From positions 248,001 to 312,000 of the IMG/VR virus record IMGVR_UViG_3300047476_002078: 64,000 nucleotides of DNA. The stretch is one strand, 5' to 3'. Positions 12,540 to 36,121 of the stretch are shown here, one piece after another. The stretch's first letter is position 1; the number at the start of each line of letters is the position of its first letter. A model generated the notes under the pieces. The model was not told where the DNA came from and did no database searches. It saw nothing but the letters and a program-made list of their open reading frames with translations. The translations under genes and the position numbers were made by a program.

Positions 12540-12986
12540 ATGTCTGATAAAAAAAGCGTTAAAGAAAGAAAGTTACAACGCAGAGAAATAGAGAAAAATT
12601 TAAAGCAATACCGTAAATCAGAAATAGTTGATATGCTTTGTGGGGTATTAGACTTACCCAGAGATAAAATACTAGATGTATGTAATGCTTTAACCGATCT
12701 TTTAATTGAATTATCTTTCACAGAGGCTATTGTGCATTTTCCTAAATTTGGGAAATTTGTATTTGAGCCTTTATCAAAAAGAAAAATTTGGAATCCTAAA
12801 GAAAAAAAGTCGTTAGTTTACCAAAATCCCAAAATGACTTTTAAGCCTTCACACAAATTACGGAGCATGTTACGGAAACAATATCGTCGTAATAGTTATC
12901 AACTTGCAGAATTGAATAAAATTTCTGATACTAAACATAAACAGCCAACAAGCTGGTCAAAAATAACTGAGGAAAAAGAGGGATGA
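12540..12986 (+). CDS. HU/IHF-like DNA-binding protein with terminal extensions
   Basis: VHFPKFGKF.....KRKIWNP......KMTFKPSHKLR matches the HU arm signature. Confidence 0.75.
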   Translation: MSDKKSVKERKLQRREIEKNLKQYRKSEIVDMLCGVLDLPRDKILDVCNALTDLLIELSFTEAIVHFPKFGKFVFEPLSKRKIWNPKEKKSLVYQNPKMTFKPSHKLRSMLRKQYRRNSYQLAELNKISDTKHKQPTSWSKITEEKEG

Positions 12987-15355
12987 GCGTGAACAAGCAG
13001 GATATTATTTTAGCAGATGAACTCCCACTTATGCCTGTAAGAGATATGGTTATGTTTCCTAACATGATTGTACCTTTTTTTGTAGGCAGAGAAGAGTCTC
13101 TTAAAGCAATTGATTATGCGGCTAGAAATACTCAAAATTTGATGATTTTAGCTAGTCAAAAAGATGTTAATTTAGACAAACCTTCTAAAAATGATATTTA
13201 CCCCATAGCTGTTGCAGCTTTAATTATCAAAACAAAACAAGTCCCAGATGGAAGAATTAAGATATTAACTCAAGGGCTACATAAAGTTCGTATTTTAGAG
13301 TGGAAAGCGGAAGCTCCTTACGTAGTAAAATATGAAATCGTTGATGATTTTATAAGCGAATTAAAGACAGAACATAAAGCTCTCATGGGTTTAGTAAAAG
13401 ATAACCTTGAGCAATTAGTTACTATTGGTAAATTCGCTTATCCTGAAATAGTACAAATTTTAGAAGAACAAGAAGACCCCGGAAAATTAGCGGATTTAAT
13501 TTCTGCAAACTTGTCTCTAAAATTGACAGAAAGTTATTCTATTTTATCAGAACTTGACCCTATCAAAAGACTCGAAAAGGTTAATAAAACTTTAGTTCAA
13601 GAAATTGAAATATACAGATTACAACAAAAAATAAAAACCAATACTAAAGAAGAAGTTACTAAATCACAAAGAGAATACTTTCTTCGAGAACAGCTTCAAT
13701 CTATTCGTAAAGAGCTAGGTGAAAACGAAGATAAAGAAGGTTACAGTAAAAAAATTAAAGATGCTAAAATGCCAGAAGAGGCTCAAAAAGAAGCATTAAA
13801 ACAAGCAAAAAGATTAGACAGTCTCAGCCCAGAGTCTAGCGAAGCTTCAATAATTAAACACTATCTTGATTGGATGGTAGAGCTTCCTTGGGCAGTATCT
13901 ACTCAAGACAACTTAGACATTAAAAATGCTCGAAAAGTTCTTGATGAAGATCATTTTGGTCTTGATGATGTTAAAGAAAGGATTCTGGAATTCTTATCAA
14001 TCAAAAAATTGAACCCTGATAGTAAAGGCTCAATTCTGTGCCTTGTCGGTCCTCCGGGCGTAGGTAAAACAAGTATCTGTAGAAGTGTTGCCAAAAGTAT
14101 GAACAGAAAATATATCCGTTCATCTCTTGGTGGAGTAAGGGATGAGGCTGAGATCAGAGGGCACAGAAGAACTTATATAGGTTCCATGCCCGGAAAAGTC
14201 ATTCAAGGAATTAAACAAGCTGGTTCAAATAACCCTGTTTTTGTTTTGGATGAAATTGATAAATTGGGAAGAGATTTTAGAGGCGACCCTTCTTCCGCTT
14301 TACTGGAAGTTTTAGACCCAGAACAAAATAAAGATTTCAAAGACCACTATATCAATGTTGCTTTTGATGTCAGTAAAGCTTTTTTTATTGCTACAGCTAA
14401 CAGCCTAGATACAATTCCGGGTCCTTTATTAGACCGTATGGAAGTTATTAATGTAAGTGGCTATACTGAATCAGAAAAAGCTGAAATTTGTCGTAAATAC
14501 CTTCTTCCGAAGCATCAATTAGAGAGCGGATTAGGTGACATGAAATTAGAATTTGACCCTTTTGCTATCCGCAAGATGATTCAGGGCTACACTCGTGAAA
14601 ACGGTCTTAGAAATCTTGAGCGTCTTGTAAATAGAGTTTTCCGTAAAATTGCTCTACTTGTAACAGAAGACAAGATTAAAGTTTCAGAAAAATTGAATAT
14701 TACGGAAGATTCAATTACAAAATATCTGGGAGCACCAAAATACCTAACAGATGAGATGAGAAATTCTGACTTAGTAGGTGTTTGCACAGGTCTTGCTTAT
14801 ACTTCTGTTGGAGGAGTCACTTTAGAACTGGAAGCTATCCTTGTGCCTGAAAAAGACTTTAATTTAAAAGTTTCGGGTAATTTAGCTCAAGTTATGAAGG
14901 AATCTTCTGACATTTCATTCTCCGTTGTAAAATCTCGTGCAGATAAATTCGGTATTAAACTAGAAGATTTCAAAAACACTGGAATACATTTACATGCTTT
15001 AAATGGAGCCGTGCCAAAAGATGGTCCATCCGCAGGTATTACTATGGCAACGGTATTAACAAGTTTATTGTCAAGTAAGCCTGTTAGAAAAGACGTGTCT
15101 ATGACAGGAGAATTAACTCTTACTGGAAGAGTGCTGGCTATCGGTGGAGTTAAAGAAAAGCTAATAGCGGCTGCACGTCATGGGTGTAAGACTGTAATTA
15201 TACCTAAAGATAATGAAAAAGATTTGGAAGAAGTACCAGAAGAAATTAAAAAACTTATCCAGATCGTACCTGTAACAACTATTGAAGAAGTTATAGACAT
15301 TGCTTTAGTTAAAGAAGCTAAATCTTCTAAAAAGAAAAAAGAGAAAATTGCATGA
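12983..15355 (+). CDS. lon: ATP-dependent Lon protease (LonA)
   Basis: LPLMPVRD N-domain, GPPGVGKT, RGHRRTYIGSMPG, LDEIDK, PKDGPSAG (Ser), GGVKEK (Lys). Confidence 0.97.
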   Translation: MSVNKQDIILADELPLMPVRDMVMFPNMIVPFFVGREESLKAIDYAARNTQNLMILASQKDVNLDKPSKNDIYPIAVAALIIKTKQVPDGRIKILTQGLHKVRILEWKAEAPYVVKYEIVDDFISELKTEHKALMGLVKDNLEQLVTIGKFAYPEIVQILEEQEDPGKLADLISANLSLKLTESYSILSELDPIKRLEKVNKTLVQEIEIYRLQQKIKTNTKEEVTKSQREYFLREQLQSIRKELGENEDKEGYSKKIKDAKMPEEAQKEALKQAKRLDSLSPESSEASIIKHYLDWMVELPWAVSTQDNLDIKNARKVLDEDHFGLDDVKERILEFLSIKKLNPDSKGSILCLVGPPGVGKTSICRSVAKSMNRKYIRSSLGGVRDEAEIRGHRRTYIGSMPGKVIQGIKQAGSNNPVFVLDEIDKLGRDFRGDPSSALLEVLDPEQNKDFKDHYINVAFDVSKAFFIATANSLDTIPGPLLDRMEVINVSGYTESEKAEICRKYLLPKHQLESGLGDMKLEFDPFAIRKMIQGYTRENGLRNLERLVNRVFRKIALLVTEDKIKVSEKLNITEDSITKYLGAPKYLTDEMRNSDLVGVCTGLAYTSVGGVTLELEAILVPEKDFNLKVSGNLAQVMKESSDISFSVVKSRADKFGIKLEDFKNTGIHLHALNGAVPKDGPSAGITMATVLTSLLSSKPVRKDVSMTGELTLTGRVLAIGGVKEKLIAAARHGCKTVIIPKDNEKDLEEVPEEIKKLIQIVPVTTIEEVIDIALVKEAKSSKKKKEKIA

Positions 15356-16272: not shown

Positions 16273-17262
16273 ATGATTGTTAATTGGGGAATCCCGTTAT
16301 TCAAATCAGTATTAATAAATTTTGATTTTTCGTTCAATTCATTTAATTGTGATGGTAAGTTAGTAAAATATAACGGTAATTTAAGTTCTCTCAACGGAAA
16401 TATTTTTGTATCTAAAGAAGATTTTTCCAGAATAGTGATTGATTTTTACAAGAGTTTATATCCTATTGCTTCAAACGATAAAATAAAAGATTTGTACTTA
16501 CTAATTTCTGATTTCATATCACTTGCTTTCCCAATACAGGGAGACATTCAAATTGATAAAAATTTAGTTTTAAATTTTTGGAACTCTCGATTATCAGAAT
16601 CCGAAATAGAAAATATTATTCATAATTCAAAACCTCAATTTATTGATAAAGATAACCTACCATTTGAACATTATTTTGCAGACTACTTAGGAAAAAAAGA
16701 AAAATCTTTGCACTTTGATAAACTATTATCAAAATCTCAGGACTTGGGAACAAGTTTCATGCTTTTCATGCTTACTGTTTGCTTCCGTACAATTTTGGGT
16801 GGAGTATATACCGCACCTTTTATAAATGATAATAATCTGTCTCGTTTTTTCCCCCGATATAAAGGTATGCCAAACAAAGAGTTAATAAAAAATTTAAGTT
16901 TTATTCATGATGAAAAAATACCGTTTATTTATACCAACTATTTAGATAGCAGTAAAATTGTTGAATACATATTTGATAAATACGACCACTCCTTAATAAA
17001 AGAAATGTGGGTAAATATATTGTATGAAAGAATTCCAGAAGTAGTTTCCCCTTACGAGCCAAAACAATTTTTGGGGGATTTGTTTGATAATTTAAAAGAT
17101 ATTGTTATTACAAAAAATTGGGAAAAATTTATTGATGATAAAACTTTAGGTCTTGAATGGGTTGTTTGTTTTAATAATTCTCCAGAGCTTTCAGTAAGAT
17201 ACAAGAGATCATTTGTTAAATATTTTTCAAACCAAGATGACTATTCGGTTTTTGTATTATGA
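16273..17262 (+). CDS. Uncharacterised paralog family member A
   Basis: FVSKEDF..IV..FYKSLYP and LPFEHYFADY, shared with 17259 and 31332. Confidence 0.75.
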   Translation: MIVNWGIPLFKSVLINFDFSFNSFNCDGKLVKYNGNLSSLNGNIFVSKEDFSRIVIDFYKSLYPIASNDKIKDLYLLISDFISLAFPIQGDIQIDKNLVLNFWNSRLSESEIENIIHNSKPQFIDKDNLPFEHYFADYLGKKEKSLHFDKLLSKSQDLGTSFMLFMLTVCFRTILGGVYTAPFINDNNLSRFFPRYKGMPNKELIKNLSFIHDEKIPFIYTNYLDSSKIVEYIFDKYDHSLIKEMWVNILYERIPEVVSPYEPKQFLGDLFDNLKDIVITKNWEKFIDDKTLGLEWVVCFNNSPELSVRYKRSFVKYFSNQDDYSVFVL

Positions 17263-18176
17263 ATTTGACAGAAAAAACAAAATTAAACATTTCTTTAAAT
17301 AAAATAACTCTTTTTTGTGTTGATGAAAAATACATAACAAATGAAGGGGAAGTGTTTTCATTTGATGAGTTTATAAGATCAGAAAAGGAATATTTCGTCT
17401 CACCTGAAGATTTCAGTATTATAATTTCAAAGTATTTAATATCCTTGTATCCTGACAAAAGTGTTGAAACTATTTTTGAGAAAATTTGTGATTATATCAA
17501 AATAAACGGTTCTATATTTAATAGAGACTTTCTTAGCATTGATTTTAAATTCAAATATTATAATCCTGAAAAAATAGAAAATTTTGAACCTTCTTTTGAA
17601 TTTTTGTATGGTGATTACTTGGCAGGAAATATAAACAGTAAATTTATAGAAAAATGTAGAAAGCTTTGTTATGACCATTTTTTATATATGACTATAGGTT
17701 CTTTCAACGCCATATTTACATCTTCTTTTGGATTAAGAGATTCCGTTCCTGACGCTTTAGAAAATTTATTTGATTTTGAAAATTCAAAATCTGTTTTGGA
17801 TTTATTAAAAAAACCATATTTTGACATTCTTTGGGATATTAAAGTGCCTATTGAATTCGATGGTAAAGATTCTGAAACAACCTCTGAATATTTGTTAAAA
17901 AATTTAGGTAAAGAAAAAATAAAAGAATTTTGGAATATATTACTATCCAAAAGAATCCCTGCTTATTTATACAGAAATTATGATAAAGACTTCACTAATA
18001 AAATGTTTAAAGAGAGATTGGATGCTATAGAAAGTCAAAATTTTGAACCTTTTATAAATAGCGAAACTGGTTTAATTTTTAGCGTTTTATATTCAAATGT
18101 TCCTTATTTCAGGAATTCTTATAACAGAGGTCTTATAACTTTCTTTAAGGAATCTGATTCAATTTGGCGGCTTTAG
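17259..18176 (+). CDS. Uncharacterised paralog family member B
   Basis: FVSPEDF..II..YLISLYP and PSFEFLYGDY. Confidence 0.75.
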   Translation: MNLTEKTKLNISLNKITLFCVDEKYITNEGEVFSFDEFIRSEKEYFVSPEDFSIIISKYLISLYPDKSVETIFEKICDYIKINGSIFNRDFLSIDFKFKYYNPEKIENFEPSFEFLYGDYLAGNINSKFIEKCRKLCYDHFLYMTIGSFNAIFTSSFGLRDSVPDALENLFDFENSKSVLDLLKKPYFDILWDIKVPIEFDGKDSETTSEYLLKNLGKEKIKEFWNILLSKRIPAYLYRNYDKDFTNKMFKERLDAIESQNFEPFINSETGLIFSVLYSNVPYFRNSYNRGLITFFKESDSIWRL

Positions 18177-18804
18177 TAGAAAACATTACGTGAGGCTTAT
18201 TCTTACTATGTAAGCTAGGGTCAACATACCCAAAGTGACACATTACTGTATATCTTTCTTTGTCACAAACCAATGGATTAACTTTGTGTTTAAATATGGG
18301 ATTAAGATTATTAACACAAACCAAAGTACCGTGTTGAGGCAGTATAGTATTAAGTGTAAATATTTTTTCAGAAGATTCTATTCCAACGCTCAAATATCCG
18401 CCGTCAGTTATAGTATATGTATCCTGTGTTAGATAAAGCATAGTTGTCATAAAAGAACCGTCAAGATAATCAGAGTGCCATGCCATACCTTCTCCATTTT
18501 TAAATTTATTGGACATTGGAAGACCTTGACTAAAATCTCCAAAATTTTTTATGAAAAAAGAAAAATACTCACTGGAGGATAAATAATTCCAGTAATAATG
18601 AAACAAAGAAGGTTGGGTATCTTTTTCCCAATGTAAAACCAAAGGGTCTTTCCAACCGTACTTTTCTTGATTAGCTTTTACAAAATTTTCTCCTCTAATT
18701 ATTTGTAGCAGGTCATCACAAAAATTTTTATCGACGGAAGAAATCACGTAACCATCTTTAAAAAATTGATTCAAATCAAAATGCGTATTATTAACTATTT
18801 CCAT
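18145..18804 (-). CDS. 2OG-Fe(II) oxygenase (prolyl-hydroxylase-like)
   Basis: WHSD...GGYL...HKV...RYT (HxD...H...R). Confidence 0.85.
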   Translation of the reverse strand: MEIVNNTHFDLNQFFKDGYVISSVDKNFCDDLLQIIRGENFVKANQEKYGWKDPLVLHWEKDTQPSLFHYYWNYLSSSEYFSFFIKNFGDFSQGLPMSNKFKNGEGMAWHSDYLDGSFMTTMLYLTQDTYTITDGGYLSVGIESSEKIFTLNTILPQHGTLVCVNNLNPIFKHKVNPLVCDKERYTVMCHFGYVDPSLHSKNKPHVMFSTKAAKLNQIP

Positions 18805-18806
18805 AA

Positions 18807-19337
18807 TCAGTATCCAGATTTACACATTAGAGAGTACCTTTTTAAAGGTAGCTTCATTTTTTCAACTTTATGAAAGAATAAAGGATTCCAATTCAATATC
18901 GAAACTAGAGTACCGTTTTCAGGCAGTATGTTTTGAATTTTATGGGCATTTTTTATAGAAAGACATCCGCCGAAAGACTCGTGCCAATTTTCATCACCTA
19001 AATAAAGTATATGATTAATGGGAAAATTGTGTGAAGCATCATTATGCCACTCTAAACCGTCACCTTGGCGATAACTATGAACGCAGAACTGCCTTTGCGA
19101 GAAATCACCGTAAATCTGAGTAAAAGGCTTCTCATATTCATTTAACATGTTTATAAAAAATTCTTGAATACTTTCTGGAACTTGAAGAGTTAAAAGCGGT
19201 GCATTGCTATCGTTATATTTTTCATTTGTATCTTGAAAGTTAAGTTTGCTAATCACTTCTAAAATTTCGCAAGGCGTTTGTATTTTTTGATAAGTAACAC
19301 CATTTTCAAATAATTCTGTGAGTTTAATTTTTAACAT
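18807..19337 (-). CDS. 2OG-Fe(II) oxygenase (prolyl-hydroxylase-like)
   Basis: WHND...LYL...GGCL...HKV...RYS. Confidence 0.85.
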   Translation of the reverse strand: MLKIKLTELFENGVTYQKIQTPCEILEVISKLNFQDTNEKYNDSNAPLLTLQVPESIQEFFINMLNEYEKPFTQIYGDFSQRQFCVHSYRQGDGLEWHNDASHNFPINHILYLGDENWHESFGGCLSIKNAHKIQNILPENGTLVSILNWNPLFFHKVEKMKLPLKRYSLMCKSGY

Positions 19338-19362: not shown

Positions 19363-19420
19363 TGACCGTAAAAAGCACCGTAATTTTTTTCTTGCTACCG
19401 TAAAGTTTTGTTACTATCAT
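19363..19420 (+). promoter_or_regulatory. sigma70 promoter of the ssb-ruvC-recA-sbc operon with three ACCGTAA boxes
   Basis: TTGCTA(19392)-17-TATCAT(19415); box variants at 19363, 19375 and 19395. Confidence 0.65.
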
Positions 19421-25184: not shown

Positions 25185-25469
25185 ATGGCAGAATTAAATG
25201 AGCTTGTAAGTAAATACCAAAACATACAAAAAAGTATTGAGCAATCAAGAGACTTAAAAGCACGTCTTGAAGAAAGAAAGAAAAATGTTCATAAACAACT
25301 GAGCACGTTATTAGATAAAATTAAATCTCAAGGTTATGACCCAAAAAACCTTAAAGAAATCAGAGATCAAAAAATACAAGAACTCGAAAATCTTGTTAAA
25401 GAAAAAGAACAAGAGGTAAAAGAAGTTCACGAAAAATTAAAAGCTATTGATATTGAGACATCTCTATGA
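25185..25469 (+). CDS. Small coiled-coil protein (possible SbcC middle segment)
   Basis: Heptad-rich; GGAG RBS favours ATG 25185; coupled to the SbcC C-half. Confidence 0.65.
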   Translation: MAELNELVSKYQNIQKSIEQSRDLKARLEERKKNVHKQLSTLLDKIKSQGYDPKNLKEIRDQKIQELENLVKEKEQEVKEVHEKLKAIDIETSL

Positions 25470-26122
25470 TGGATTTGAATATTTTTGAGAAAAATTTAAG
25501 CGATCTCTCCGATCTTCAGCAAAAGCTCATCGGAGAGCGTTCTGCTTTATTAAGAAAGCATACTCAAAAAATTCAAGAATTAGAAAAATTAAAATTAGAA
25601 AGTCTGGAAATTCAAAAAGCAAAGCTCGTTCTTGAAGATTTGATAAAACAGTTTATCGGGTTTCAATTAGAAAAAATTCGAGAATATGTTTCTTACGGTC
25701 TTAAAACGGTTATTCCAGATCAAAACATTGAATTTGATTGCAACGTAACAACGAAAATGAATAAGCCTTGGGTTGAACTTCTCACTAAAAATAGTGAAGG
25801 TGTTTCGGAAAATGCTTTAGAAGCTTTTGGAGGTTCAGTAGCTCAAGTTGAATCTTTGATTTTAAGAGTATTAGCGATACTGCAATTAAAACTTTACCCT
25901 ATGATTGTATTGGACGAAAGTTTAAATGCTGTTAGTGAAGAGTATCTGCCAAATTTATCAGTTTTATTGAATGAACTGAGTAAACAATTAAACATCAAAA
26001 TACTTTTAGTTACGCATAATAAAGAAATTCTAGCAAACGCTACAAGAGTTTATCGAGCTACTGAAACATCTCGTGGATTGAAATTTACGGAAGTTCACTC
26101 TTCTGAAATGGTGACTACATGA
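25466..26122 (+). CDS. SbcC/Rad50-like ATPase, C-terminal half
   Basis: Coiled coil, then FGGSVAQ (signature), MIVLDES (Walker B), LLVTH (H-loop). Confidence 0.8.
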   Translation: MMDLNIFEKNLSDLSDLQQKLIGERSALLRKHTQKIQELEKLKLESLEIQKAKLVLEDLIKQFIGFQLEKIREYVSYGLKTVIPDQNIEFDCNVTTKMNKPWVELLTKNSEGVSENALEAFGGSVAQVESLILRVLAILQLKLYPMIVLDESLNAVSEEYLPNLSVLLNELSKQLNIKILLVTHNKEILANATRVYRATETSRGLKFTEVHSSEMVTT

Positions 26123-28453: not shown

Positions 28454-28630
28454 ATGGAAGACCTATATGAGGTAAAAATTGAAGTCACTGTTCCAAAAAT
28501 TCTTAAAATTAAAGCTAAAGATGAGAACGAGGCTTTAGAAAAAGTACAGCAATTGTTAGAAGAGAAAAACATAGAGCGTACAAGAATTCAAGAAATGACT
28601 TGGAACAAAATAGAGGAAAAAAGTGAATAA
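28454..28630 (+). CDS. 58-aa protein missed by the ORF track
   Basis: GGAGG RBS; [32 protein letters not shown]...; overlaps the clpX start. Confidence 0.7.
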
Positions 28631-29804
28631 GAACGCACAATCTTCTTGCTCTTTTTGTGGAAGCAAAACCCAATTGCTTGGGCTTTCTCCACAAATACTT
28701 ATATGTAAAAACTGTAGTGAGAAAATTTCCGGCTACTTTAAAGAAAATAATCAAGAAGAGGTCACATTCAATTTTGATCTGACTCCCCTTCAAATAAAAA
28801 CACATTTAGATGATTTTGTTATTGGTCAAGATCAAGCCAAGATAGAGTTAGCTACGGCAGTCTATTACCATTACAAAAGAATCAATGATAAAGATTCAGA
28901 AAATCTGGTAGAAAAAAGCAATATTCTTCTTTTGGGTCCGACTGGAGTGGGAAAGACTGCTCTATGTAAAGCATTAGCTAAATGCTTAAATGTGCCTTTT
29001 GCAATAGCGGATGCAACTAATCTTACTCAAGCAGGATACGTAGGTGATGATGTCGAAAATATACTTTATTACTTACTTCAAAATGCGGATGGAAGTGTAG
29101 CAAAAGCTGAAAAGGGTATAGTTTATATTGATGAAATAGACAAAATTGCGTCCAAAACTCAAAACGTGAGCCTTACAAGAGATGTTAGTGGTGAGGGAGT
29201 TCAACAAGCTTTACTTAAAATAATCGAAGGAACAATTGCAAAAATACCTCCAAAAGGAGGGAGAAAGCATCCAGACCAAGAATGTATTCAAATTAACACT
29301 GAAAATATTTTGTTTATAGTTGGAGGAGCTTTTGTAGGATTAACAGATATTATTGAGAGACGAACAAATAAAAAACGTATAGGTCTATCTAGTCAAACAT
29401 TTGACGATTTTGAAACTTTAAAAGATGTAACTCAAGAAGATTTAATATCTTATGGTTTTATTCCAGAATTTATCGGAAGATTGCCAAATATTGCAACGCT
29501 TCAAAATTTGACAGTGAGTGATTTAGTAAGCATAATCACCAAACCAAAAAATTGTATTTTATCGCAGTATAAAAAACAGTTCAACTACAATGGAGTTGAA
29601 TTAGAGATTACAGGCGAAGCTTTGAATAAAATCGCTGAAAGAGCCTTATCAAAGAATACAGGAGCAAGAGGTTTAAGGGCAGAGTTTGAGGTAGTTTTAA
29701 AAGATTATTTGTATGAAGCTCCAAATAAGACATTTGAAAAAGTAATAGTTGGAGATAATTTAGAAGTATGTGTAAAAAAAGAATATAAAGAAGCAGCGAA
29801 TTAA
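28623..29804 (+). CDS. clpX: ClpX AAA+ unfoldase
   Basis: CSFCG...[68 protein letters not shown]. Confidence 0.95.
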
Positions 29805-29815
29805 ACGGGGGATTA

Positions 29816-30304
29816 ATGCTACATAACGTGATGATGAATCTAGTGGTTATAAAAGAAGATAACCCCGGAAAATATTCAATTTTGCTTCATGATCCAGATG
29901 GACTCGGATGGAGACTCCCAAGTGGAGACGTTTTAGAAGTAGAGGATGAGGATGAACTTCCAGAACCTAACTCAATTTATTCTATTTCGTGTTTTCATCA
30001 CTTACAAAGTTTATGTAATTTAAGTCCTGAAGTTATAGAAGATTTTGATATTTTACCTTATTCCCACATACGGTCTTTTAGCCCAGAATTAGAAGTCCCA
30101 GAGTTAATCCTTGTTTACTGGGCGATTATAGATTCTGAAAAATTAGATTTAGTTTATGAACAGTTAAAATCCAAAAACGGTAATGCTCGATTTTTCCCTT
30201 ATATGGATGAAGCTGGAAACTGCACCTTACCTGAATTAAATATAATTGAAGATGAGCAGTCTATTATCGGTGTCATGAATAATTTTTATAAAAAGGTAAA
30301 TTAA
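29816..30304 (+). CDS. Degenerate Nudix-fold-like protein
   Basis: ILL......WRLPSG.V precedes the expected Nudix box, but REUxEE is absent. Confidence 0.35.
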   Translation: MLHNVMMNLVVIKEDNPGKYSILLHDPDGLGWRLPSGDVLEVEDEDELPEPNSIYSISCFHHLQSLCNLSPEVIEDFDILPYSHIRSFSPELEVPELILVYWAIIDSEKLDLVYEQLKSKNGNARFFPYMDEAGNCTLPELNIIEDEQSIIGVMNNFYKKVN

Positions 30305-30864
30305 TGCAACAAGGTATTGAAAAAGATTTAGAAGTTTCCTTAGAATGGACTCCTAATCCCAAGACTTTAAAATTAGTTGTAAATAAAACACTTTTAAGCA
30401 AAGGTATCAGTAATTCAAAAAGTTTACAAGAAGCTTCCGAAAAATCACCTTTGGCAGAAAAATTATTTTCTATTGATGGTGTTAAAGGTGTAATGATTGC
30501 AAAAGATTTTATTACTGTAACAATTGAAGGTTACGAAGTTTATGAAATTTACGACAGAATTAAATCTTGTATTATAGAAGTCATTAACTCAGGTTCCGAA
30601 TTAGTTTACGCATTTTTTAATAAAAAGGAACTTACTGGCATTGAACTTGAGATTGATACTATTTTACAAACTCATATCAAACCTGCGGTAGCAAAAGATG
30701 GAGGAGACATTAATTTTGAGAGCTTTGAAGACGGTGTGGTATATGTATCTCTTCACGGTTCTTGCAACGGTTGTCCTAGCTCTAAAATAACTTTAAAAAA
30801 CGGAGTCGAAACTCTTTTAAAAGAAAAAATACTCTCTGTTAAAGAAGTCGTATCTATAAGCTAA
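30304..30864 (+). CDS. nfuA: NfuA/NFU1 Fe-S cluster carrier
   Basis: TPNP.TLK, SPLAEKLF.IDGV, KDGGDI, GSCNGCPSS.ITLK.GVE. Confidence 0.92.
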   Translation: MQQGIEKDLEVSLEWTPNPKTLKLVVNKTLLSKGISNSKSLQEASEKSPLAEKLFSIDGVKGVMIAKDFITVTIEGYEVYEIYDRIKSCIIEVINSGSELVYAFFNKKELTGIELEIDTILQTHIKPAVAKDGGDINFESFEDGVVYVSLHGSCNGCPSSKITLKNGVETLLKEKILSVKEVVSIS

Positions 30865-31368
30865 ATGGCAAAATTAGAATTAGATCAAGTAGCTTTGTTA
30901 GATTTTAAAGAAATCATTCCTAATCTTTGTTTGCAATTAAAAACAAAAAGAAATGGTAAGTTATTATCTATTTTAAATTCAATAAAAATAGACGGGCATA
31001 AGTTTAAGTTTGTTTATAATGAAAACTCTTTTTATAAAATTTATGTTAAGTGCCCCAAGTGTAAAGAGCCTAAATTAAAACTCTACAAATTAGATGATGT
31101 TTATTGGTGTAGTTCCTGCCATAGAGTTGTTAAGAAGAAAAATAAAAGACGTTCAACAGTTTACTCCAAGTATGTCAGACCTTTAAAACTACTAAAAGAA
31201 ATCGAAGATGCTCTATTTACCGATAATATAACTGAAGGCAAGAGACGAAAATTGGAAATAAAAGCTGAAAAATTAAGAAAAATCATACCGATATATATCT
31301 ATGAACTAAGAGAAAAAGTCTTAAAAAGTATTCAGAAAGATAAAGATATTGGATTATCTGACAAATAA
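30865..31368 (+). CDS. Basic Zn-ribbon protein (possible DNA binder)
   Basis: CPKC.....KLY......CSSCH. Confidence 0.65.
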   Translation: MAKLELDQVALLDFKEIIPNLCLQLKTKRNGKLLSILNSIKIDGHKFKFVYNENSFYKIYVKCPKCKEPKLKLYKLDDVYWCSSCHRVVKKKNKRRSTVYSKYVRPLKLLKEIEDALFTDNITEGKRRKLEIKAEKLRKIIPIYIYELREKVLKSIQKDKDIGLSDK

Positions 31369-32411
31369 TTTAATAGGAAAAAGTTAATTCTTCTTCTATG
31401 TGACGACATCTGCATCACACTTTCAATCCATTCTTTATTATCAATAAGAGACTCAAAATCTCTATCCTTTATAATCCTTAATTTATTTTTAATTTGCTTA
31501 TCTCGAATGAGATTTTTAATACAGTCGTTTATGGTACTATTGTTTATATTTAAAAATTCGATATTGTATTTAGGTAAACTTCCGCTTAAAGGCATTGCTA
31601 AAATAATATTTCCGCTTATCCCACGATTAATATCTGATTCAAAAGTTTTAACATACAGTTCCGAAATGTGGTCTATTCCGTAAATTTCAATTATTTTATA
31701 AACATCTTCATCTGTGTCACAGTTAAATACTAATGGGTCAAAGATAAAAGGGTAAGATTTTTTAAACATTTCTCTCAGAGATTCTTTTTCTGATTTAAAA
31801 AGTTTTTCGTGTGGATAAGTGATGAAAAAGTTTTTAATTTCTCTCAGCATTTCTTTCATTTCTTTTAACGCTATTTTTTCGATGTCTTTTATCAAAGATT
31901 GATAAGTTTTGGGTTTTTTAAAAAACTTATAGTCGCCGTAACGAATTTCAAAAGGAAGAAATTCTACCATCTCTTCCTTAATTAAATTATTGTCTGCTAT
32001 CTGGTAAATAACCTCAAATTCTTGCTTACTGAATTCTATGTTGATATTTTCAATTAAGAATAGTTTATCAAATGTTAAGTCACATATTTTGTAAATTATT
32101 TCCTTATTTTGGTTAGGGTAAAGGCTTTTAAAGAAAGAAACGATTAAGTATTTAAAGTCTTTTATTTCGCAATATATGACAGACGGTCTATCACTATGAT
32201 AGCAAAAAAAATCATTAAAAAATAACTCAAGACTCGAATTATAATTGCTTGATATTAGCGTATGTAGATTTGAAGACTTTGAGATATATCTTGAATTTTG
32301 ATCTAATGTTATTTTAGTTGATAGTATTATTGCATCTGAGAATAATAAATGTTGTTTACTAAAATTTGTATCCAAATCTAAATATTTGTTTTTAAATAAT
32401 TGAAAAATCAT
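31332..32411 (-). CDS. Uncharacterised paralog family member C
   Basis: IYCEIKDF..LI.SFFKSLYP and LPFEIRYGDY. Confidence 0.75.
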   Translation of the reverse strand: MIFQLFKNKYLDLDTNFSKQHLLFSDAIILSTKITLDQNSRYISKSSNLHTLISSNYNSSLELFFNDFFCYHSDRPSVIYCEIKDFKYLIVSFFKSLYPNQNKEIIYKICDLTFDKLFLIENINIEFSKQEFEVIYQIADNNLIKEEMVEFLPFEIRYGDYKFFKKPKTYQSLIKDIEKIALKEMKEMLREIKNFFITYPHEKLFKSEKESLREMFKKSYPFIFDPLVFNCDTDEDVYKIIEIYGIDHISELYVKTFESDINRGISGNIILAMPLSGSLPKYNIEFLNINNSTINDCIKNLIRDKQIKNKLRIIKDRDFESLIDNKEWIESVMQMSSHRRRINFFLLNYLSDNPISLSF

Positions 32412-32944
32412 GAATCGTACTTATCCAATTTTGGATACCTTGGTAGTAGCATAGTTAAGAACTCTTTATCTTCTTTAAAATTAGGGGACTTGATTGCGAC
32501 AAACTTTTTATATCTAAGAATAGTGAATCCTAAATTATCTTTTGAAAAAGACTGTCTTCCTAAAAAATAATTATAAACTTCTACAGAATCGGGAATATTA
32601 AAACATTTAGCTTTTACATAAAAATTTTCTAGTCCTTCTGAACACAAAAAGCTTGTGAGGTATGAAGAACTTAAAGAAGAGATTGCTTGGATATTTCCGT
32701 CTAGCCACTGTTGAGTGTTAGGCTTCCAAAAGTCGCAGAATAAAAAACTAACTTCATTTCCTTGAGTAAAACCCATCTGAAGGTTTGGAACAAAATTAGC
32801 AAAATTAACTAGAGAATTGAGATGTTTTTCAAGATCGACGTTTGGGTAAATTTTCATTCTTAATATAGCGTAACATCTTCTAGCCAAATAAAAATCTGAT
32901 CTACCTTCGTACTGCTCTTTCATTCTTTTATTCAAATCTTTCAT
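32408..32944 (-). CDS. Thg1-like (tRNAHis guanylyltransferase) homolog lacking catalytic Asp residues
   Basis: L..RMK.YE....YL.RR...I.R, GFTQGNEVS, W..GNIQ..S, FNIP...EV.NYF..RQ; RxDG is RMKI and SDE is GNE. Confidence 0.7.
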   Translation of the reverse strand: MKDLNKRMKEQYEGRSDFYLARRCYAILRMKIYPNVDLEKHLNSLVNFANFVPNLQMGFTQGNEVSFLFCDFWKPNTQQWLDGNIQAISSLSSSYLTSFLCSEGLENFYVKAKCFNIPDSVEVYNYFLGRQSFSKDNLGFTILRYKKFVAIKSPNFKEDKEFLTMLLPRYPKLDKYDS

Positions 32945-32973
32945 ATAAACCTTTTACGGTATATAATTGTAGC

Positions 32974-33597
32974 ATGGTATTAGATTTACATTCACTGTTT
33001 TCTAAGGGATTTGCTGTAACAAAAGTAGATAACGTAGATTATTTGTTACATAGCATTAAAAATGATGTTTTCGACGATCATTCTGGCATATATTCAAATA
33101 ACGCTCCGCCAAAAGTAGTCGATTGGTCTTACACAGAAAAAGTTCCAGACCTTGTTAAAAATTTTTGGAGCAATTTAGCGTTAGATTCTTATTTTAATCT
33201 GTTTCGTTTAAATTATGGTGATTTCACCCATCTAAAAATGAGTGCTCACAAATATGAAAAGAACCATGAATTGCTTTGGCATCACGATTTTCATGAGGCT
33301 TGCCCAATAAATAATATTTTATATTTATCTGATACTGAAGTTTCAGAAGACCATGGCTCTTTACTTAAAATAGGAAAGTGGAAAATAGATAGAAACGGTT
33401 GGGGTAAGTCCCATGAAGTTGAAATTTTAGACACTATAATTCCATATCACGGTACTTTGGTAACTTTAATGAACTTTAATCCTATCTTTTGTCATTCAGT
33501 AACGCCTTTTTTAGGAAATTATGGAAGGTATTCGTTAATTTGTAGAATGGGTTACACGGAAAATATAGAAAACAGTAAGATTTCAAAATTCATGTAA
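32974..33597 (+). CDS. 2OG-Fe(II) oxygenase (paralog of 18145 and 18807)
   Basis: WHHD...ILYL...PYHGTLV..MNFNPIF.HSV...RYSL. Confidence 0.85.
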   Translation: MVLDLHSLFSKGFAVTKVDNVDYLLHSIKNDVFDDHSGIYSNNAPPKVVDWSYTEKVPDLVKNFWSNLALDSYFNLFRLNYGDFTHLKMSAHKYEKNHELLWHHDFHEACPINNILYLSDTEVSEDHGSLLKIGKWKIDRNGWGKSHEVEILDTIIPYHGTLVTLMNFNPIFCHSVTPFLGNYGRYSLICRMGYTENIENSKISKFM

Positions 33598-33849
33598 TTC
33601 AATACATAGTATTTTTGAGTTTGATATTGATAATATTTCAACTTCTGACAAGCTAGTGTATTGTGAGATGTCTCCGCACCCTTCCGTGAGTATTTGGTTA
33701 TCGAAAAGAATCGAACCGCTTTGCAAATAATATGTCTCTTTTTTAATGTTTAATTTTATGGATTTACCTTGTAAAATATCAATTATTCTAGTTGTGCATT
33801 GATTGGTTTTATCAACAATTGTTTCTAATCCCCATTCATGTTTATTCAT
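33583..33849 (-). CDS. Degenerate cupin (MPI-like)
   Basis: K.EWG.E....I.I..GK.....KKETYYLQSG; metal-binding His absent. Confidence 0.45.
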   Translation of the reverse strand: MNKHEWGLETIVDKTNQCTTRIIDILQGKSIKLNIKKETYYLQSGSILFDNQILTEGCGDISQYTSLSEVEILSISNSKILCIELHEF

Positions 33850-33885
33850 AAAACCTCTACTAAATGTTTAATATAATATAGTTAT

Positions 33886-34179
33886 ATGAAAAAATATGCG
33901 ATAGCTTTAAAAATAGCTGAATTAACTCTCAAAGATATAGTTTATCAGGTTGGAGAGTTAAACCCTTCTTTACACCAAAGAAAAACAGAACAATCTGACC
34001 CAAAAGAAATCATTATGCAGTTAGAAAAAATGCAAAAATGGTTGGAAAACGAAGGTCAAAATATGTCTGAGCTTGTTAATAAAGACATTTTGCCAGAGCA
34101 TCATAAATACCCAGAAATAAGGGGCTTGGTAAAATACTTAGTTGAAGATTCAACCAAACCAAAAAAGGTGATTTACTAA
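33886..34179 (+). CDS. Hypothetical, possibly head-associated protein
   Basis: N-terminal KKYA/LKIA motif as in the head cluster. Confidence 0.55.
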   Translation: MKKYAIALKIAELTLKDIVYQVGELNPSLHQRKTEQSDPKEIIMQLEKMQKWLENEGQNMSELVNKDILPEHHKYPEIRGLVKYLVEDSTKPKKVIY

Positions 34180-34739
34180 TGGCACTTTCAAACTTAATAC
34201 AACGTGACGTATATTTTCTTAAAAAGGGTGACACTATAACAGTATTAGTTAATGAAGAACTAGCTGAAAACGGATGGGCTGGAGGTCATTACTTTTCTTA
34301 TACTGACTCAATAGTTGTCGATGGTCATGTAGTGCCTGTTGTAAGAAGAGGAAACGGCATCCAAAGAGGTCCGTTTGCAATGTATGGTTCCGATGAGCCT
34401 GAAGATAAATCAATGTCTTATACAGGTCAGCATTTGAAGTATAAATATGCTCAAACAGTATATGGCAATACGCATTTCTTAACACGTATTTTTGAGACTA
34501 ATTCTTATTTTGATAGGACTGGGTTAGACACTCTTACTGACTATCATTCAGTTTCACACGACGTATTAAACCCGACATCTTTTTCATTGCAATATAAGGC
34601 AGGAAACCCTTTATACATTTCAGAAAGAGGTTTTTTAACCACTGAAAAAATAACAGAGGCGAATGAAGTAGTAGCTTATATTTTTCAAGAACCTAAAGAA
34701 GAAAATTCATTGTTTTTAGGCGTAGCTAATATTTCTTAA
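34179..34739 (+). CDS. Putative head decoration protein (third paralog)
   Basis: IFET...GNPLYISERGFLTT resembles IFET...GDKLYSSQNGLLTT of 53526..54056. Confidence 0.55.
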   Translation: MALSNLIQRDVYFLKKGDTITVLVNEELAENGWAGGHYFSYTDSIVVDGHVVPVVRRGNGIQRGPFAMYGSDEPEDKSMSYTGQHLKYKYAQTVYGNTHFLTRIFETNSYFDRTGLDTLTDYHSVSHDVLNPTSFSLQYKAGNPLYISERGFLTTEKITEANEVVAYIFQEPKEENSLFLGVANIS

Positions 34740-36121
34740 TAAACAATATCTTCAAAAGTAACTGTTCTTCCCTTTTCTAAAGGGTAGTTTCTATTTGTTG
34801 GTTTATCCGCTGTAATTATAGGGGAAGAATTACCAACTCTCTCAGATCGAGAGTTCCAAGGGTCTATAGGTGACTCAACAGATTGATTAAGATTTGTATT
34901 GTTACCTTCTATTCCAACTGAATAAACAATGTCTCCTGCGTCTAATTGTTGCAGAGTAAACATTTGCTGAAATATTGCACCTCTTTGACCAACATAATTT
35001 ATACTACCTACAGAAAATCTTTCTCCTGAAGGTCTAACAATTATATCTCTCTTATTCAACATAGGTGAAGGACCTGTCCAAGTCTCCCAAGTGTAATTAA
35101 CTCTAATACCGATCTCAGTTAATTCTACATTTTTTTCAGCGTCAGGAGGGGCAATAATTACATCGAAAGGACCTTCATATCCACCAACTATGTTAGTACC
35201 GTAACAAATGGGGCAATCTGAAGGAGAATTTTGGTGAACGTCAGAAAAATCATCACAAAGTTGACCATTCCATTTTCTGATAAAAACTTTAACTCTTTCT
35301 CCGCCTTGTTCAAGAATCCAACGGTTTCTTCTTACAGCTTCCTTCCACATCCAATCCGTTTTTTCTTGTTCGTGTAAATTTACAGATTTGCAGAATTCCA
35401 ATTCAGATTCTACTAGCTGACCTTGCGAATTTATCCCTACCGTGGTCAATTTATAAAAAATTCTATTGTGAAGATTCGCTCTTATTCTATTACTGTTTAT
35501 GTAATAGCTGACAGTTAAAGCTCCTGCATTATTTAACGGTAATCTTGGAGGGATTAATTTTTCTGTAGCTGGGTCTAATATTTGCTGGCTGATTAGAGTT
35601 ATCTCTCCAGTTAATGCTGATATTTTATGTATCGGAACCTCTAACAACCCGTTCCCATCTCCGTTATCAACTCTAACAATCACGTCTTTTATTTCAGCTA
35701 GATTGCCTTCATAAAGAGACTTTCCTTGATCTTCTATATTTTTCACAATTGGGAAAAATTTGGTCTTAAAACGCCACTCTTTTTGAGGATTGATGCCTCT
35801 TTCTAAATTTTGAACTTCTTCATTAGTTATAAGGCTATTTGTGGTTTTATCACGATACACTCCGCTACTTAAAGGTTCTGAATTAACCTTGTGGTACGGA
35901 CCTGCTTCAGAATCAAAACTTCTATATAAATTAACTCCAAGGATGGAAAAAGCAGTATTTTCGGGAAGTATGCTAGGGTTGTCCCATCTAACGTCTAATA
36001 CTCCGTTTAAATAAGGTGAAATCACAAAAACATTAATTGGAGGCTTTGGTAATAACGAGGAAGGCTTCCTTTCCGGAATTTCAAATGGTTTATTAGTTTG
36101 GTAAACTTGGTTGAATTTCAT
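34736..36121 (-). CDS. Putative neck/head-closure protein with an FN3-like N-terminus
   Basis: P.PP.NV...V.W......GVNLYRS; GGERVKVFIRK..G..C.....CPICYGT..VGGY. Confidence 0.5.
   Translation of the reverse strand: MKFNQVYQTNKPFEIPERKPSSLLPKPPINVFVISPYLNGVLDVRWDNPSILPENTAFSILGVNLYRSFDSEAGPYHKVNSEPLSSGVYRDKTTNSLITNEEVQNLERGINPQKEWRFKTKFFPIVKNIEDQGKSLYEGNLAEIKDVIVRVDNGDGNGLLEVPIHKISALTGEITLISQQILDPATEKLIPPRLPLNNAGALTVSYYINSNRIRANLHNRIFYKLTTVGINSQGQLVESELEFCKSVNLHEQEKTDWMWKEAVRRNRWILEQGGERVKVFIRKWNGQLCDDFSDVHQNSPSDCPICYGTNIVGGYEGPFDVIIAPPDAEKNVELTEIGIRVNYTWETWTGPSPMLNKRDIIVRPSGERFSVGSINYVGQRGAIFQQMFTLQQLDAGDIVYSVGIEGNNTNLNQSVESPIDPWNSRSERVGNSSPIITADKPTNRNYPLEKGRTVTFEDIVY

What the first reader, a model, noticed from the sequence alone, without database searches (positions are those of the whole stretch)
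31332..33849. Island 2: third unknown paralog and third oxygenase divergent around an operator box
Seen: 31332..32411 (IYCEIKDF..LI.SFFKSLYP, LPFEIRYGDY) is ATGA-coupled downstream of a Thg1-like gene. A paralogous oxygenase is transcribed divergently across a 29-bp gap carrying TTTACGGTATA next to TATAAT. A degenerate cupin converges on the oxygenase. Recurrence of the pair in a different arrangement suggests functional linkage rather than a single block duplication (inference).
Basis: partly seen in the sequence, partly recalled or inferred. Interest (0 to 1): 0.65.

Follow-up and report, generated by a model that had tools for sequence, protein, structure and literature searches.

The report
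Jumbo-phage orphan family beside hydroxylase paralogs
In an uncultured 356-kb freshwater jumbo phage, this stretch joins two small conserved gene pairs (a probably inactive Thg1-like gene coupled to an undescribed protein, and an intact 2-oxoglutarate oxygenase with a tiny cupin) across a gap that carries the phage's commonest promoter-like word, not a private operator.

Summary
The window lies in a complete 355,874-bp uncultured lake-water jumbo phage.

- **The unknown protein (U3).** It belongs to an undescribed family with no Pfam or PHROG hit. Only 15 clusters turned up among 1.84 billion representatives, plus a distant member in Ralstonia phage RSL2. Its first 150 residues fold like a Cys-phosphatase but lack CX5R.
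- **Copy numbers.** The genome holds 5 U-family genes, not 3, and 13 oxygenase paralogs, its largest family.
- **The Thg1-like gene.** It is Thg1-derived, but both Mg-binding aspartates are replaced and about 42 residues are deleted. It is probably not a polymerase.
- **The oxygenase.** It keeps HxD...H and RxS and is nearest OGFOD1/Tpa1. The 88-aa neighbour is a small cupin without metal-binding histidines.
- **The "operator".** It is one copy of TTTACGGT, a genome-wide promoter-like word (97 copies against 9.4 expected). It points at the oxygenase.
- **Linkage.** This is partly supported. U genes lie beside oxygenases far more often than chance (P about 1e-3 to 1e-4), in three arrangements. 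O1/U2-type pairs persist in relatives. But Thg1-like+U3 and oxygenase+cupin occur apart in other relatives, and deep-branching U genes have no oxygenase neighbour.

Function remains inferred.

The parts
31332..32411 (-). U3: 359-aa member of an undescribed jumbo-phage protein family. It has an N-terminal alpha/beta domain and a helical C-terminal part with a beta-hairpin insert.
   Evidence: ORF. Paralogs. The family has 15 representative clusters. No Pfam or PHROG hit for any of 23 members. Model pLDDT 87.5, pTM 0.82. Residues 1-150 resemble DSP/PTP phosphatases, best Z 6.8. No conserved CX5R. Whole-length match to a Ralstonia phage RSL2 protein, TM 0.62.
32408..32944 (-). Thg1-like gene, 178 aa, ATGA-coupled to U3. 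Probably catalytically inactive and shortened.
   Evidence: PHROG 4717 E 9e-12; Pfam Thg1 16.1 bits, under the 29.2 cut-off. PDB 4kgk E 2.7e-5; the L014 ortholog gives E 1e-19. Asn63 is invariant at the BtTLP D75 position, there is no conserved Asp at D30, and about 42 aa are deleted relative to L014. ATGA overlap.
32945..32973 (.). 29-bp divergent gap. TTTACGGTATATAAT lies at 32953..32967 on the + strand, ending 6 nt before the oxygenase ATG.
   Evidence: Sequence. The word is genome-wide: TTTACGGT 97 observed against 9.4 expected; the 7-mer TTACGGT has 46 of 152 copies in the 7% non-coding DNA. A sigma-70-like TTCATA-16-TATAAT match scores 10 of 12, but such matches are not above shuffles. 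The gap is identical in close relative L018.
32974..33597 (+). O3: 207-aa P4H/OGFOD1-like 2OG-Fe(II) oxygenase, one of 13 paralogs in the genome.
   Evidence: Pfam 2OG-FeII_Oxy_4/3, E 1.6e-4 and 3.4e-4, under the cut-off. H103, D105, H174, R185 and S187 are invariant in five orthologs, and all but S187 also in the three window paralogs. Profile hits OGFOD1 4nhx at 7e-6 and Tpa1 at 2e-4. 13 paralogs.
33583..33849 (-). 88-aa small cupin without metal-binding His. It converges on O3 and overlaps it by 15 nt.
   Evidence: Pirin_C_2 E 0.013 and PHROG 7851 E 0.002. The Atlas model (pTM 0.80) matches only cupins, TM 0.71-0.78, and the features search gives viral MannoseP_isomer/Cupin_2 clusters at 0.92. 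Ortholog in the same position in L019.
16273..17262 (+). U1, 329-aa paralog, first gene of the tandem U1-U2 pair (island 1).
   Evidence: U1-type clade, support 98/97.
17259..18176 (+). U2, 305-aa paralog, ATGA-type overlap with U1. Its 3' end overlaps the convergent oxygenase O1.
18145..18804 (-). O1, 219-aa oxygenase paralog convergent on U2.
   Evidence: It clusters with the U-adjacent oxygenases of L006 and L011.
18807..19337 (-). O2, 176-aa oxygenase paralog, first gene of the O2-O1 operon.
   Evidence: It clusters with the L009 oxygenase that lies divergent from a U1-type gene.
19365..19403 (-). Three copies of the (T)TTACGGT word upstream of the O2-O1 operon.
   Evidence: Genome positions 267371, 267383 and 267403 on the minus strand. 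Conserved in L002 and L004.

Best explanation
**What is shown**

The stretch is coding DNA of a complete 356-kb uncultured freshwater jumbo phage. It is the meeting point of two two-gene cassettes, each conserved on its own elsewhere.

- Cassette A (minus strand): a Thg1-derived protein that has lost both Mg-binding aspartates and about 42 residues. It is translationally coupled (ATGA) to U3.
- U3 belongs to an undescribed jumbo-phage family with 5 copies in this genome. Its N-terminal domain has a Cys-phosphatase-like shape but no CX5R.
- Cassette B: an apparently active P4H/OGFOD1-type 2OG-Fe(II) oxygenase (HxD...H and RxS intact), one of 13 paralogs, with a convergent, overlapping 88-aa cupin that lacks metal ligands.
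- The 29-bp gap carries one copy of the phage's genome-wide word TTTACGG followed by a TAnAAT-like -10 element. It is oriented toward the oxygenase and ends 6 nt before its ATG.

**What is inferred**

- The word is a promoter element giving a leaderless or near-leaderless oxygenase mRNA. It co-regulates this gene with dozens of other units, including the island-1 oxygenase operon, which has three copies.
- It is not a dedicated operator.
- The non-random closeness of U-family genes to oxygenase paralogs suggests that U proteins work with the hydroxylases, either as substrates or as targeting or regulatory partners.
- The Thg1-like/U3 pair acts as a non-polymerising binding module, plausibly for RNA 5' ends or nucleotides.
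For: - Genome identity and completeness.
- ORFs, coupling and gap.
- Cassette A is conserved in L014 (Thg1-like 40% and U3-type about 30% identical, adjacent and co-directional).
- Cassette B is conserved in L019 (58% and 35% identical, same convergent overlap) with no U or Thg1-like gene within 8 kb.
- Loss of catalytic residues: read against BtTLP D30/D75/E76 in PMC3701042.
- Oxygenase motifs and nearest solved relatives.
- Cupin fold.
- U family rarity, fold and motifs.
- Motif statistics and placement.
- U-oxygenase proximity: P = 7.6e-4 and 1.4e-4; extra members U4 and U5.
- Orthologous O1/U2-type and O2/U1-type adjacency in L006, L011 and L009.
Against: - No expression, interaction or activity data exist.
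- The one complex prediction (U3 with the Thg1-like protein) gave no answer.
- The only metatranscriptome run covers 34168..34519, outside these genes.
- Most copies of the word (106 of 152) fall inside my crude ORF calls, and 120 lie more than 100 nt from the next co-oriented start. It could therefore be a factor-binding site rather than a promoter.
- Deep-branching U loci lack oxygenase-family neighbours (by Pfam lists only for the two loci).
- Both families may simply gather in accessory islands.
- The phosphatase-like fold match is modest (Z at most 6.8).
- The RNA-end idea rests only on ancestry (Thg1) and on fold neighbours that include RNA 5'-phosphatases.
Confidence: 0.55

Rival explanations
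1. Accessory-island clustering only. U genes and oxygenase paralogs are both expanding accessory families that land in the same permissive gaps between core blocks. Their closeness reflects where insertions are tolerated, not shared function.
For: - The oxygenase is the largest paralog family, with 13 copies at 9 sites.
- Ten copies have no U neighbour.
- U-adjacent oxygenases are scattered over the tree.
- Cassettes A and B occur apart in L014 and L019.
- Deep U loci lack oxygenases.
- An HNH gene sits between U and the oxygenase in L011, and an integrase-like gene lies next to the U4 locus.
Against: - Permutation P is 7.6e-4 to 1.4e-4 under random placement, though that null ignores island structure.
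- The O1-type/U2-type adjacency, with overlapping 3' ends, persists in L006 at about 65% (oxygenase) and about 20% (U) identity, in otherwise different flanks.
Confidence: 0.3
2. One reading: U3 and the oxygenase form a dedicated divergent pair controlled by a private operator in the 29-bp gap.
For: Divergent layout with a very short gap and a distinctive word next to TATAAT. The layout is kept in close relatives (L018, and the contig of P0005 at 59% U3 identity).
Against: - The word occurs 97 to 152 times in the genome, in front of many unrelated genes.
- Only one copy is present, oriented to the oxygenase, with none oriented to the Thg1-like/U3 pair.
- The two sides of the gap are separately conserved elsewhere.
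- The gene that actually faces the oxygenase is the Thg1-like gene, not U3.
Confidence: 0.1
3. U proteins are virion or inner-body-type structural paralogs, as in phiKZ-related jumbo phages, unrelated to the oxygenases.
For: - A distant member is RSL2 ORF069, which lies in a long run of same-strand hypothetical genes containing other paralog families.
- Tandem paralogs are present.
- No family-wide catalytic motif was recognised; only Y98, F154, E155 and D225 are nearly invariant.
Against: - U1/U2 lie in a same-strand run with RNR, ligase, helicase and Lon genes, not among the genes preceded by the second motif GTGGAATCGGTATAGC, which lie mostly at 121-165 kb. That those genes are structural is my inference, not tested.
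- No proteomic data exist for any member. All RSL2-group homologs are annotated as hypothetical.
Confidence: 0.08

Closest known systems
Thg1-like proteins (TLPs), e.g. Bacillus thuringiensis TLP (PDB 4kgk/4kgm)
   Same: Detectable sequence homology over the palm domain: window protein E 2.7e-5, ortholog in L014 E 1e-19. PHROG 4717 'tRNA-His guanylyltransferase' E 9e-12.
   Different: - The metal-binding D75 is Asn in all four members.
- There is no conserved Asp at the D30 position.
- About 42 residues are missing relative to L014.
- The Pfam score is below the cut-off.
- It is coupled to a partner (U3) that TLPs are not known to have; that last point is from my own knowledge.
OGFOD1/Tpa1 and other prolyl-4-hydroxylase-like 2OG-Fe(II) oxygenases (PF13640/PF13661)
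   Same: HxD...H triad and RxS are present. A profile of the window paralogs hits OGFOD1 (4nhx, 7e-6) and Tpa1 (2e-4).
   Different: - It is a single small domain of 176-249 aa, against about 560-650 aa for the two-domain solved proteins.
- The window copy is under Pfam's cut-off.
- There are 13 paralogs in one phage.
- No tblastn match among 50,697 GenBank phage records at E 1e-5.
- The substrate is unknown.
Cys-based dual-specificity/PTP-fold phosphatases, including pseudophosphatases such as STYX and RNA 5'-phosphatases such as baculovirus BVP and PIR1
   Same: U3 residues 1-150 align to many such chains: Z 4.3-6.8, 111-138 residues. Foldseek probability is up to 0.97. The strand-loop-helix at residues 77-97 lies where the P-loop would be expected; that is my reading of the secondary structure, not a superposition.
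   Different: - There is no conserved Cys and no CX5R in the family.
- Z is under the level at which the tool's notes allow a confident fold call.
- The remaining 200 residues have no match.
- The U1 and U2 types have shorter N-termini.
Ralstonia phage RSL2 ORF069 (BAQ02597.1) and its RSL2/RSF1-group homologs
   Same: Whole-length predicted-structure match (E 1.5e-8, TM 0.62). The family profile hits it at E 3e-10 to 1e-12.
   Different: - About 13% identity.
- A phiKZ-related phage of Ralstonia/Burkholderia.
- No oxygenase or Thg1-like neighbour was detected.
- All are annotated as hypothetical.
Small viral cupins of the MannoseP_isomer C-terminal/Cupin_2 type
   Same: The 88-aa protein's Atlas model and features point to these clusters, which are mostly viral and about 100-130 aa.
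   Different: Sequence hits in Pfam are only marginal. There are no conserved His ligands. It is conserved as a convergent partner of one oxygenase lineage.

Membership tests
Thg1/TLP 3'-5' nucleotidyltransferases | Significant sequence similarity to the Thg1 palm domain | tested here: met
   PDB 4kgk E 2.7e-5 for the window protein and 1e-19 for its L014 ortholog. PHROG 4717 E 9e-12. However, Pfam PF04446 scores 16.1 bits, under the 29.2 cut-off.
Thg1/TLP 3'-5' nucleotidyltransferases | Three conserved carboxylates (BtTLP D30, D75, E76), of which D30 and D75 bind two Mg ions | tested here: not met
   D75 is replaced by Asn63, invariant in 4 members. The D30 position is Lys31 or Leu20 depending on the alignment, with no conserved Asp in the N-terminus. 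Only E64 is kept. Residue roles are taken from PMC3701042.
Thg1/TLP 3'-5' nucleotidyltransferases | Full-length catalytic core of about 245 aa | tested here: not met
   The protein is 178 aa. About 42 residues present in the L014 ortholog, aligned to BtTLP residues about 150-195, are missing.
2OG-Fe(II) oxygenase superfamily (P4H-like, PF13640/PF13661) | HxD/E...H iron-binding triad | tested here: met
   H103, D105 and H174 are invariant in 3 window paralogs and 5 O3 orthologs.
2OG-Fe(II) oxygenase superfamily (P4H-like, PF13640/PF13661) | Basic residue binding the 2OG C5 carboxylate (RxS) | tested here: met
   R185 and S187 are invariant in the O3 orthologs. R185 is also invariant among the window paralogs.
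2OG-Fe(II) oxygenase superfamily (P4H-like, PF13640/PF13661) | Score over Pfam's gathering threshold | tested here: inconclusive
   O3 scores 22.5 and 22.0 bits against a cut-off of 27. Related paralogs in other contigs carry PF13640/PF13661 hits on record, and L006:492-1031 gives E 7e-12.
2OG-Fe(II) oxygenase superfamily (P4H-like, PF13640/PF13661) | Double-stranded beta-helix fold and hydroxylase activity | not tested
Activity cannot be tested with these tools.
Cys-based PTP/DSP phosphatases | PTP/DSP alpha/beta fold | tested here: inconclusive
   About 40 top rows of the wide VIA search are DSP/PTP chains, Z 4.3-6.8, over residues 1-150. Foldseek gives probability up to 0.97 but E of 0.05 or worse. 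This is below the confident range stated by the tool.
Cys-based PTP/DSP phosphatases | Catalytic CX5R P-loop | tested here: not met
   The position after the strand (U3 C81) is C, S, V, L, A, T, F, I or D across 23 members. No Arg is conserved six residues on.
Cupin superfamily (88-aa ORF) | Small beta-barrel cupin fold | tested here: met
   The Atlas's own model (pTM 0.80) matches 10 of 10 cupin clusters at TM by query 0.71-0.78. The features search gives viral cupin clusters at 0.90-0.92. Pfam is only marginal.
Cupin superfamily (88-aa ORF) | Metal-binding His/Glu motifs | tested here: not met
   The window protein has two His, H5 and H86. H5 is Tyr in L018. Neither is an invariant column of the three-sequence alignment.
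Dedicated operator of a divergent gene pair | Site specific to this intergenic region, bound by a dedicated regulator | tested here: not met
   The 7-mer core occurs 152 times and TTTACGGT 97 times against 9.4 expected. It lies in front of many unrelated genes and three times upstream of the O2-O1 operon. Regulator binding cannot be tested here.

The most novel reading that the evidence does not exclude
The U family and the expanded P4H-like oxygenases form a previously unrecognised jumbo-phage protein-hydroxylation toolkit. In it, U proteins (pseudo-phosphatase-like) are dedicated substrates or targeting subunits. In the U3 branch the U protein pairs with a dead Thg1-like protein to bind RNA 5' ends or tRNA, directing modification of the host translation or RNA-repair machinery or shielding phage RNA from defence nucleases.
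Probability: 0.12. Interest if true: 0.75.

Novelty: new variant of a known kind. Interest (0 to 1): 0.45.

Why it matters
- **A possible pseudoenzyme.** Thg1-like enzymes are the only known 3'-5' polymerases. A conserved phage lineage that has lost both metal-binding aspartates, yet stays coupled to a partner, would be a natural pseudoenzyme worth testing.
- **An unexplained expansion.** Thirteen P4H/OGFOD1-like hydroxylases in one phage is an unusual expansion. Their substrates are unknown.
- **A lead to substrates or partners.** The orphan U family that keeps turning up beside these hydroxylases gives a concrete, cheap pair to co-express and analyse by mass spectrometry.
- **A regulatory handle.** The genome-wide word TTTACGGT, and a second 16-mer in front of genes at 121-165 kb, give ready handles on the regulatory programme of an uncultured freshwater jumbo phage.

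If the linkage turns out to be mere island clustering, the finding is ordinary accessory-gene mosaicism.

Tried and rejected
- **Nothing close in public phage records.** Megablast of 30000-35000 against GenBank phages found no match. tblastn of U3, P0009 and O3 against 50,697 phage records found none.
- **IMG/VR scans were empty.** Scans with U3, O3, A6 and A7 gave no confirmed relative, and A5 was too diverse to scan.
- **First U3 model was unusable.** Built from 8 sequences, it had pLDDT 64 and gave only noise in PDB and Atlas searches.
- **Sequence-based leads for U3 were blank.** The Atlas features search gave 0.76, not usable. The profile search against PDB sequences gave no hit.
- **Complex prediction gave no answer.** U3 with the Thg1-like protein scored 0.00 against a mark of 0.32. 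This is evidence neither for nor against binding.
- **A weak BLAST hit was dropped.** The Thg1-like gene hit ORF 25466..26122, which turned out to be SMC_N-like, not Thg1.
- **Sigma-70 scan was uninformative.** It found 16 sites against 19.3 in shuffles, and no terminators.
- **Reads said nothing on expression.** Lake metagenomes carry the phage and variants. The single RNA run covers only 34168..34519.
- **Co-divergence of paralogous pairs is rejected.** O3, O1, O2 and the U4-adjacent oxygenase fall in different oxygenase clades.
- **RSL2 neighbours are unrelated.** They are neither Thg1-like nor oxygenase-like by profile. The RP12/RP31 paper has nothing on ORF069.
- **Limits.** No alternative genetic code was used.


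Full report
**Observation.** The four ORFs are as described: 31332..32411(-) 359 aa (here U3), 32408..32944(-) 178 aa, 32974..33597(+) 207 aa and 33583..33849(-) 88 aa. The Thg1-like stop and the U3 start share ATGA. The divergent gap 32945..32973 is 29 bp and reads ...TTTACGGTATATAAT..., ending 6 nt before the oxygenase ATG. Within the window, U3 is 24-26% identical to two tandem ORFs at 16273..17262 and 17259..18176, with shared DF...SLYP and PFE..Y.DY motifs. The oxygenase is 31-35% identical to 18145..18804(-) and 18807..19337(-).

**Where it lies.** The window is bases 248001-312000 of a 355,874-bp virus record with direct terminal repeats, rated 100% complete, GC 34%.
- It encodes RNR, NAD-ligase, helicases, Lon, a ClpX-like ATPase and a NifU-like protein in the window, and 5 tRNAs, none of them tRNA-His.
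- No GenBank phage is close; the best helicase identity is 30%.
- Lake and freshwater metagenomes hold it.

**The unknown family (U).**
- A word search with the three paralogs found only 5 clusters in 5.8 billion proteins, all close and syntenic.
- The full HMMER search found 15 representative clusters in 1.84 billion.
- None of 23 aligned members hits Pfam or PHROGs.
- The tree shows three well-supported subfamilies: U1-type, U2-type (often a tandem pair) and U3-type.
- With the 23-sequence alignment, the U3 model reached pLDDT 87.5 and pTM 0.82.
- Residues 1-150 align to dozens of dual-specificity/PTP phosphatase chains (Z 4.3-6.8; Foldseek probability up to 0.97). The family has no conserved Cys and no CX5R. 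I therefore call this a fold likeness, not membership.
- The whole protein matches predicted structures of uncharacterised jumbo-phage proteins, best Ralstonia phage RSL2 (E 1.5e-8, TM 0.62). The family profile finds that gene, ORF069, at E 3e-10. All its homologs are annotated as hypothetical.
- The broader profile also revealed two further members in this genome. One is a 292-aa gene at genome 208488..209366(+) that overlaps the 3' end of an oxygenase paralog. The other is a 249-aa gene at 31083..31832(+), 3 kb from a cluster of four oxygenases.

**The Thg1-like gene.** Homology is real: PHROG 4717 at 9e-12, PDB 4kgk at 2.7e-5, and the 212-aa ortholog in L014 at 1e-19.
- BtTLP uses D30, D75 and E76, and D75A nearly abolishes activity (PMC3701042).
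- In all four members of the phage lineage, D75 is Asn. No Asp is conserved in the N-terminal stretch where D30 belongs.
- The window version also lacks about 42 residues.
- It is the only Thg1-like gene in the genome and is under Pfam's cut-off.
- I conclude it is probably not a polymerase.

**The oxygenase and the cupin.**
- H103, D105, H174, R185 and S187 are invariant in the O3 orthologs, and all but S187 are also invariant in the three window paralogs.
- The nearest solved relatives are OGFOD1 and Tpa1.
- With 13 copies, this is the largest paralog family of the genome.
- The 88-aa ORF has a confident Atlas model that matches only cupins, and features like small viral MannoseP_isomer/Cupin_2 proteins. 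It has no conserved His.

**The gap.**
- TTACGGT occurs 152 times against about 23.5 expected. TTTACGGT occurs 97 times against 9.4 expected.
- 46 copies fall in the 7% of DNA outside my ORF calls.
- Copies lie singly, in tandem or as inverted pairs, often 18-60 nt before a start codon and followed by TAAAAT-like bases.
- Three copies precede the island-1 oxygenase operon. The sites are unchanged in close relatives, while distant relatives do not use the word.
- In this gap there is a single copy, pointing to the oxygenase.
- Read as a promoter, it would give a leaderless or near-leaderless mRNA. That is inference. A factor-binding site is equally allowed, because 106 copies fall inside ORF calls.
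- A second, distinct 16-mer, GTGGAATCGGTATAGC, precedes about 30 genes, mostly at 121-165 kb.

**Linkage test.**
- In this genome the four U loci lie 1, 1, 2 and 8 genes from the nearest oxygenase. Random placement gives at least 3 of 4 loci within two genes at P = 7.6e-4, and the summed log distance at P = 1.4e-4. The null ignores island structure.
- In L006, a U2-type gene converges on an O1-type oxygenase followed by a second one. In L011, a tandem U pair, an HNH gene and an O1-type oxygenase lie in a row. In L009, an O2-type oxygenase is divergent from a U1-type gene.
- L010, L013, L015 and L016 have U genes without any oxygenase-family neighbour. The two loci on a 345-kb contig show none in the precomputed Pfam lists, but their DNA was not on hand for a profile check.
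- For the pair in the finding, L014 has Thg1-like, then U3-type, then the orthologs of window 33886..34179 and 34179..34739, with no oxygenase or cupin between.
- L019 has the 58%-identical oxygenase with its cupin next to a metallophosphatase and an ATP-dependent ligase, and no U or Thg1-like gene within 8 kb.
- Island 2 is therefore two cassettes side by side. The juxtaposition is kept only in the near lineage: L018, and the contig of P0005 at 59% U3 identity.
- U-adjacent oxygenases fall in different clades, so the paralogous pairs did not arise by duplication of a pair.

**Mechanism.**
- Shown: the gene content, the coupling, the loss of Thg1 catalytic residues, the intact oxygenase motifs, the genome-wide word, and the non-random proximity.
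- Inferred: the word acts as a promoter; Thg1-like and U3 act together as a non-catalytic binding pair; U proteins are substrates or partners of the hydroxylases.
- The one complex prediction gave no answer, and the RNA run says nothing about these genes.

**Comparison and novelty.** The oxygenase and the Thg1-like gene are divergent members or derivatives of known families. U is an undescribed family with a distant relative in a cultured phage. The pairing of a degenerate Thg1-like gene with U3, and the repeated closeness of U genes to a 13-copy hydroxylase family, are new variants of ordinary phage accessory modules. The function is still open.

Noticed in passing
whole genome (G000), e.g. 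genome 121324, 139608, 151827; none in the finding region: A second conserved 16-mer, GTGGAATCGGTATAGC, has about 30 copies, mostly at 121-165 kb. It lies about 25-35 nt before start codons and is followed by a GGAG-type ribosome site. It looks like a separate promoter class, possibly late.
   Followed up: partly
genome 34903..37641, 49061, 104203, 173525..174963, 207848, 233578 (outside the window), plus the window copies: The P4H-like oxygenase is the largest paralog family of the phage, with 13 copies including a run of four. No tblastn match in GenBank phages.
   Followed up: partly
window 12983..15355, 28623..29804, 30304..30864: The phage encodes a full-length Lon protease (790 aa), a ClpX-like AAA ATPase (393 aa) and a two-domain Nfu/NifU-like iron-sulfur scaffold protein.
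   Followed up: no
L023:3488-4366 (genome 208488..209366) and L024:3083-3832 (genome 31083..31832): Two further divergent U-family genes. The first overlaps the 3' end of an oxygenase and lies beside an amidoligase and a short integrase-like gene. The second is truncated (249 aa) and follows two glycosyltransferases.
   Followed up: partly
L019:4343-5308 and L019:6587-9877: A related 95.6-kb phage contig carries a deoxyhypusine-synthase-like gene, a PhyH dioxygenase, a metallophosphatase and an ATP-dependent ligase around the O3 ortholog. In the window's genome a metallophosphatase also lies next to the four-oxygenase cluster.
   Followed up: no
L016:8417-10024; L009:1400-1810: Other U-family loci lie near RNA- or translation-related genes. 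A Ro60/TROVE+vWA gene is about 1.4 kb from the tandem U pair in L016. A PTH2 peptidyl-tRNA hydrolase converges on the U gene in L009. This may be chance.
   Followed up: no
L022 (Ralstonia phage RSL2 66000-84000): Around the distant U homolog ORF069, RSL2 has several local paralog families (ORF067/072/075/077, ORF073/074, ORF076/078, ORF064/065), all annotated as hypothetical.
   Followed up: partly
window 34168..34519: The only pieces of this region found in a lake metatranscriptome run (X9) lie in the 186-aa ORF 34179..34739, which is 71% identical to its L014 ortholog. These are contigs only, so neither strand nor level can be read.
   Followed up: no
window 30865..31368 versus 31332..32411: U3 converges on a 167-aa zinc-ribbon ORF and overlaps it by 37 nt. 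O3 and the cupin overlap by 15 nt, and U2 and O1 by 32 nt. No terminator-like hairpins were found in 30800-34400. Convergent overlapping ends seem to be a habit of these cassettes.
   Followed up: no
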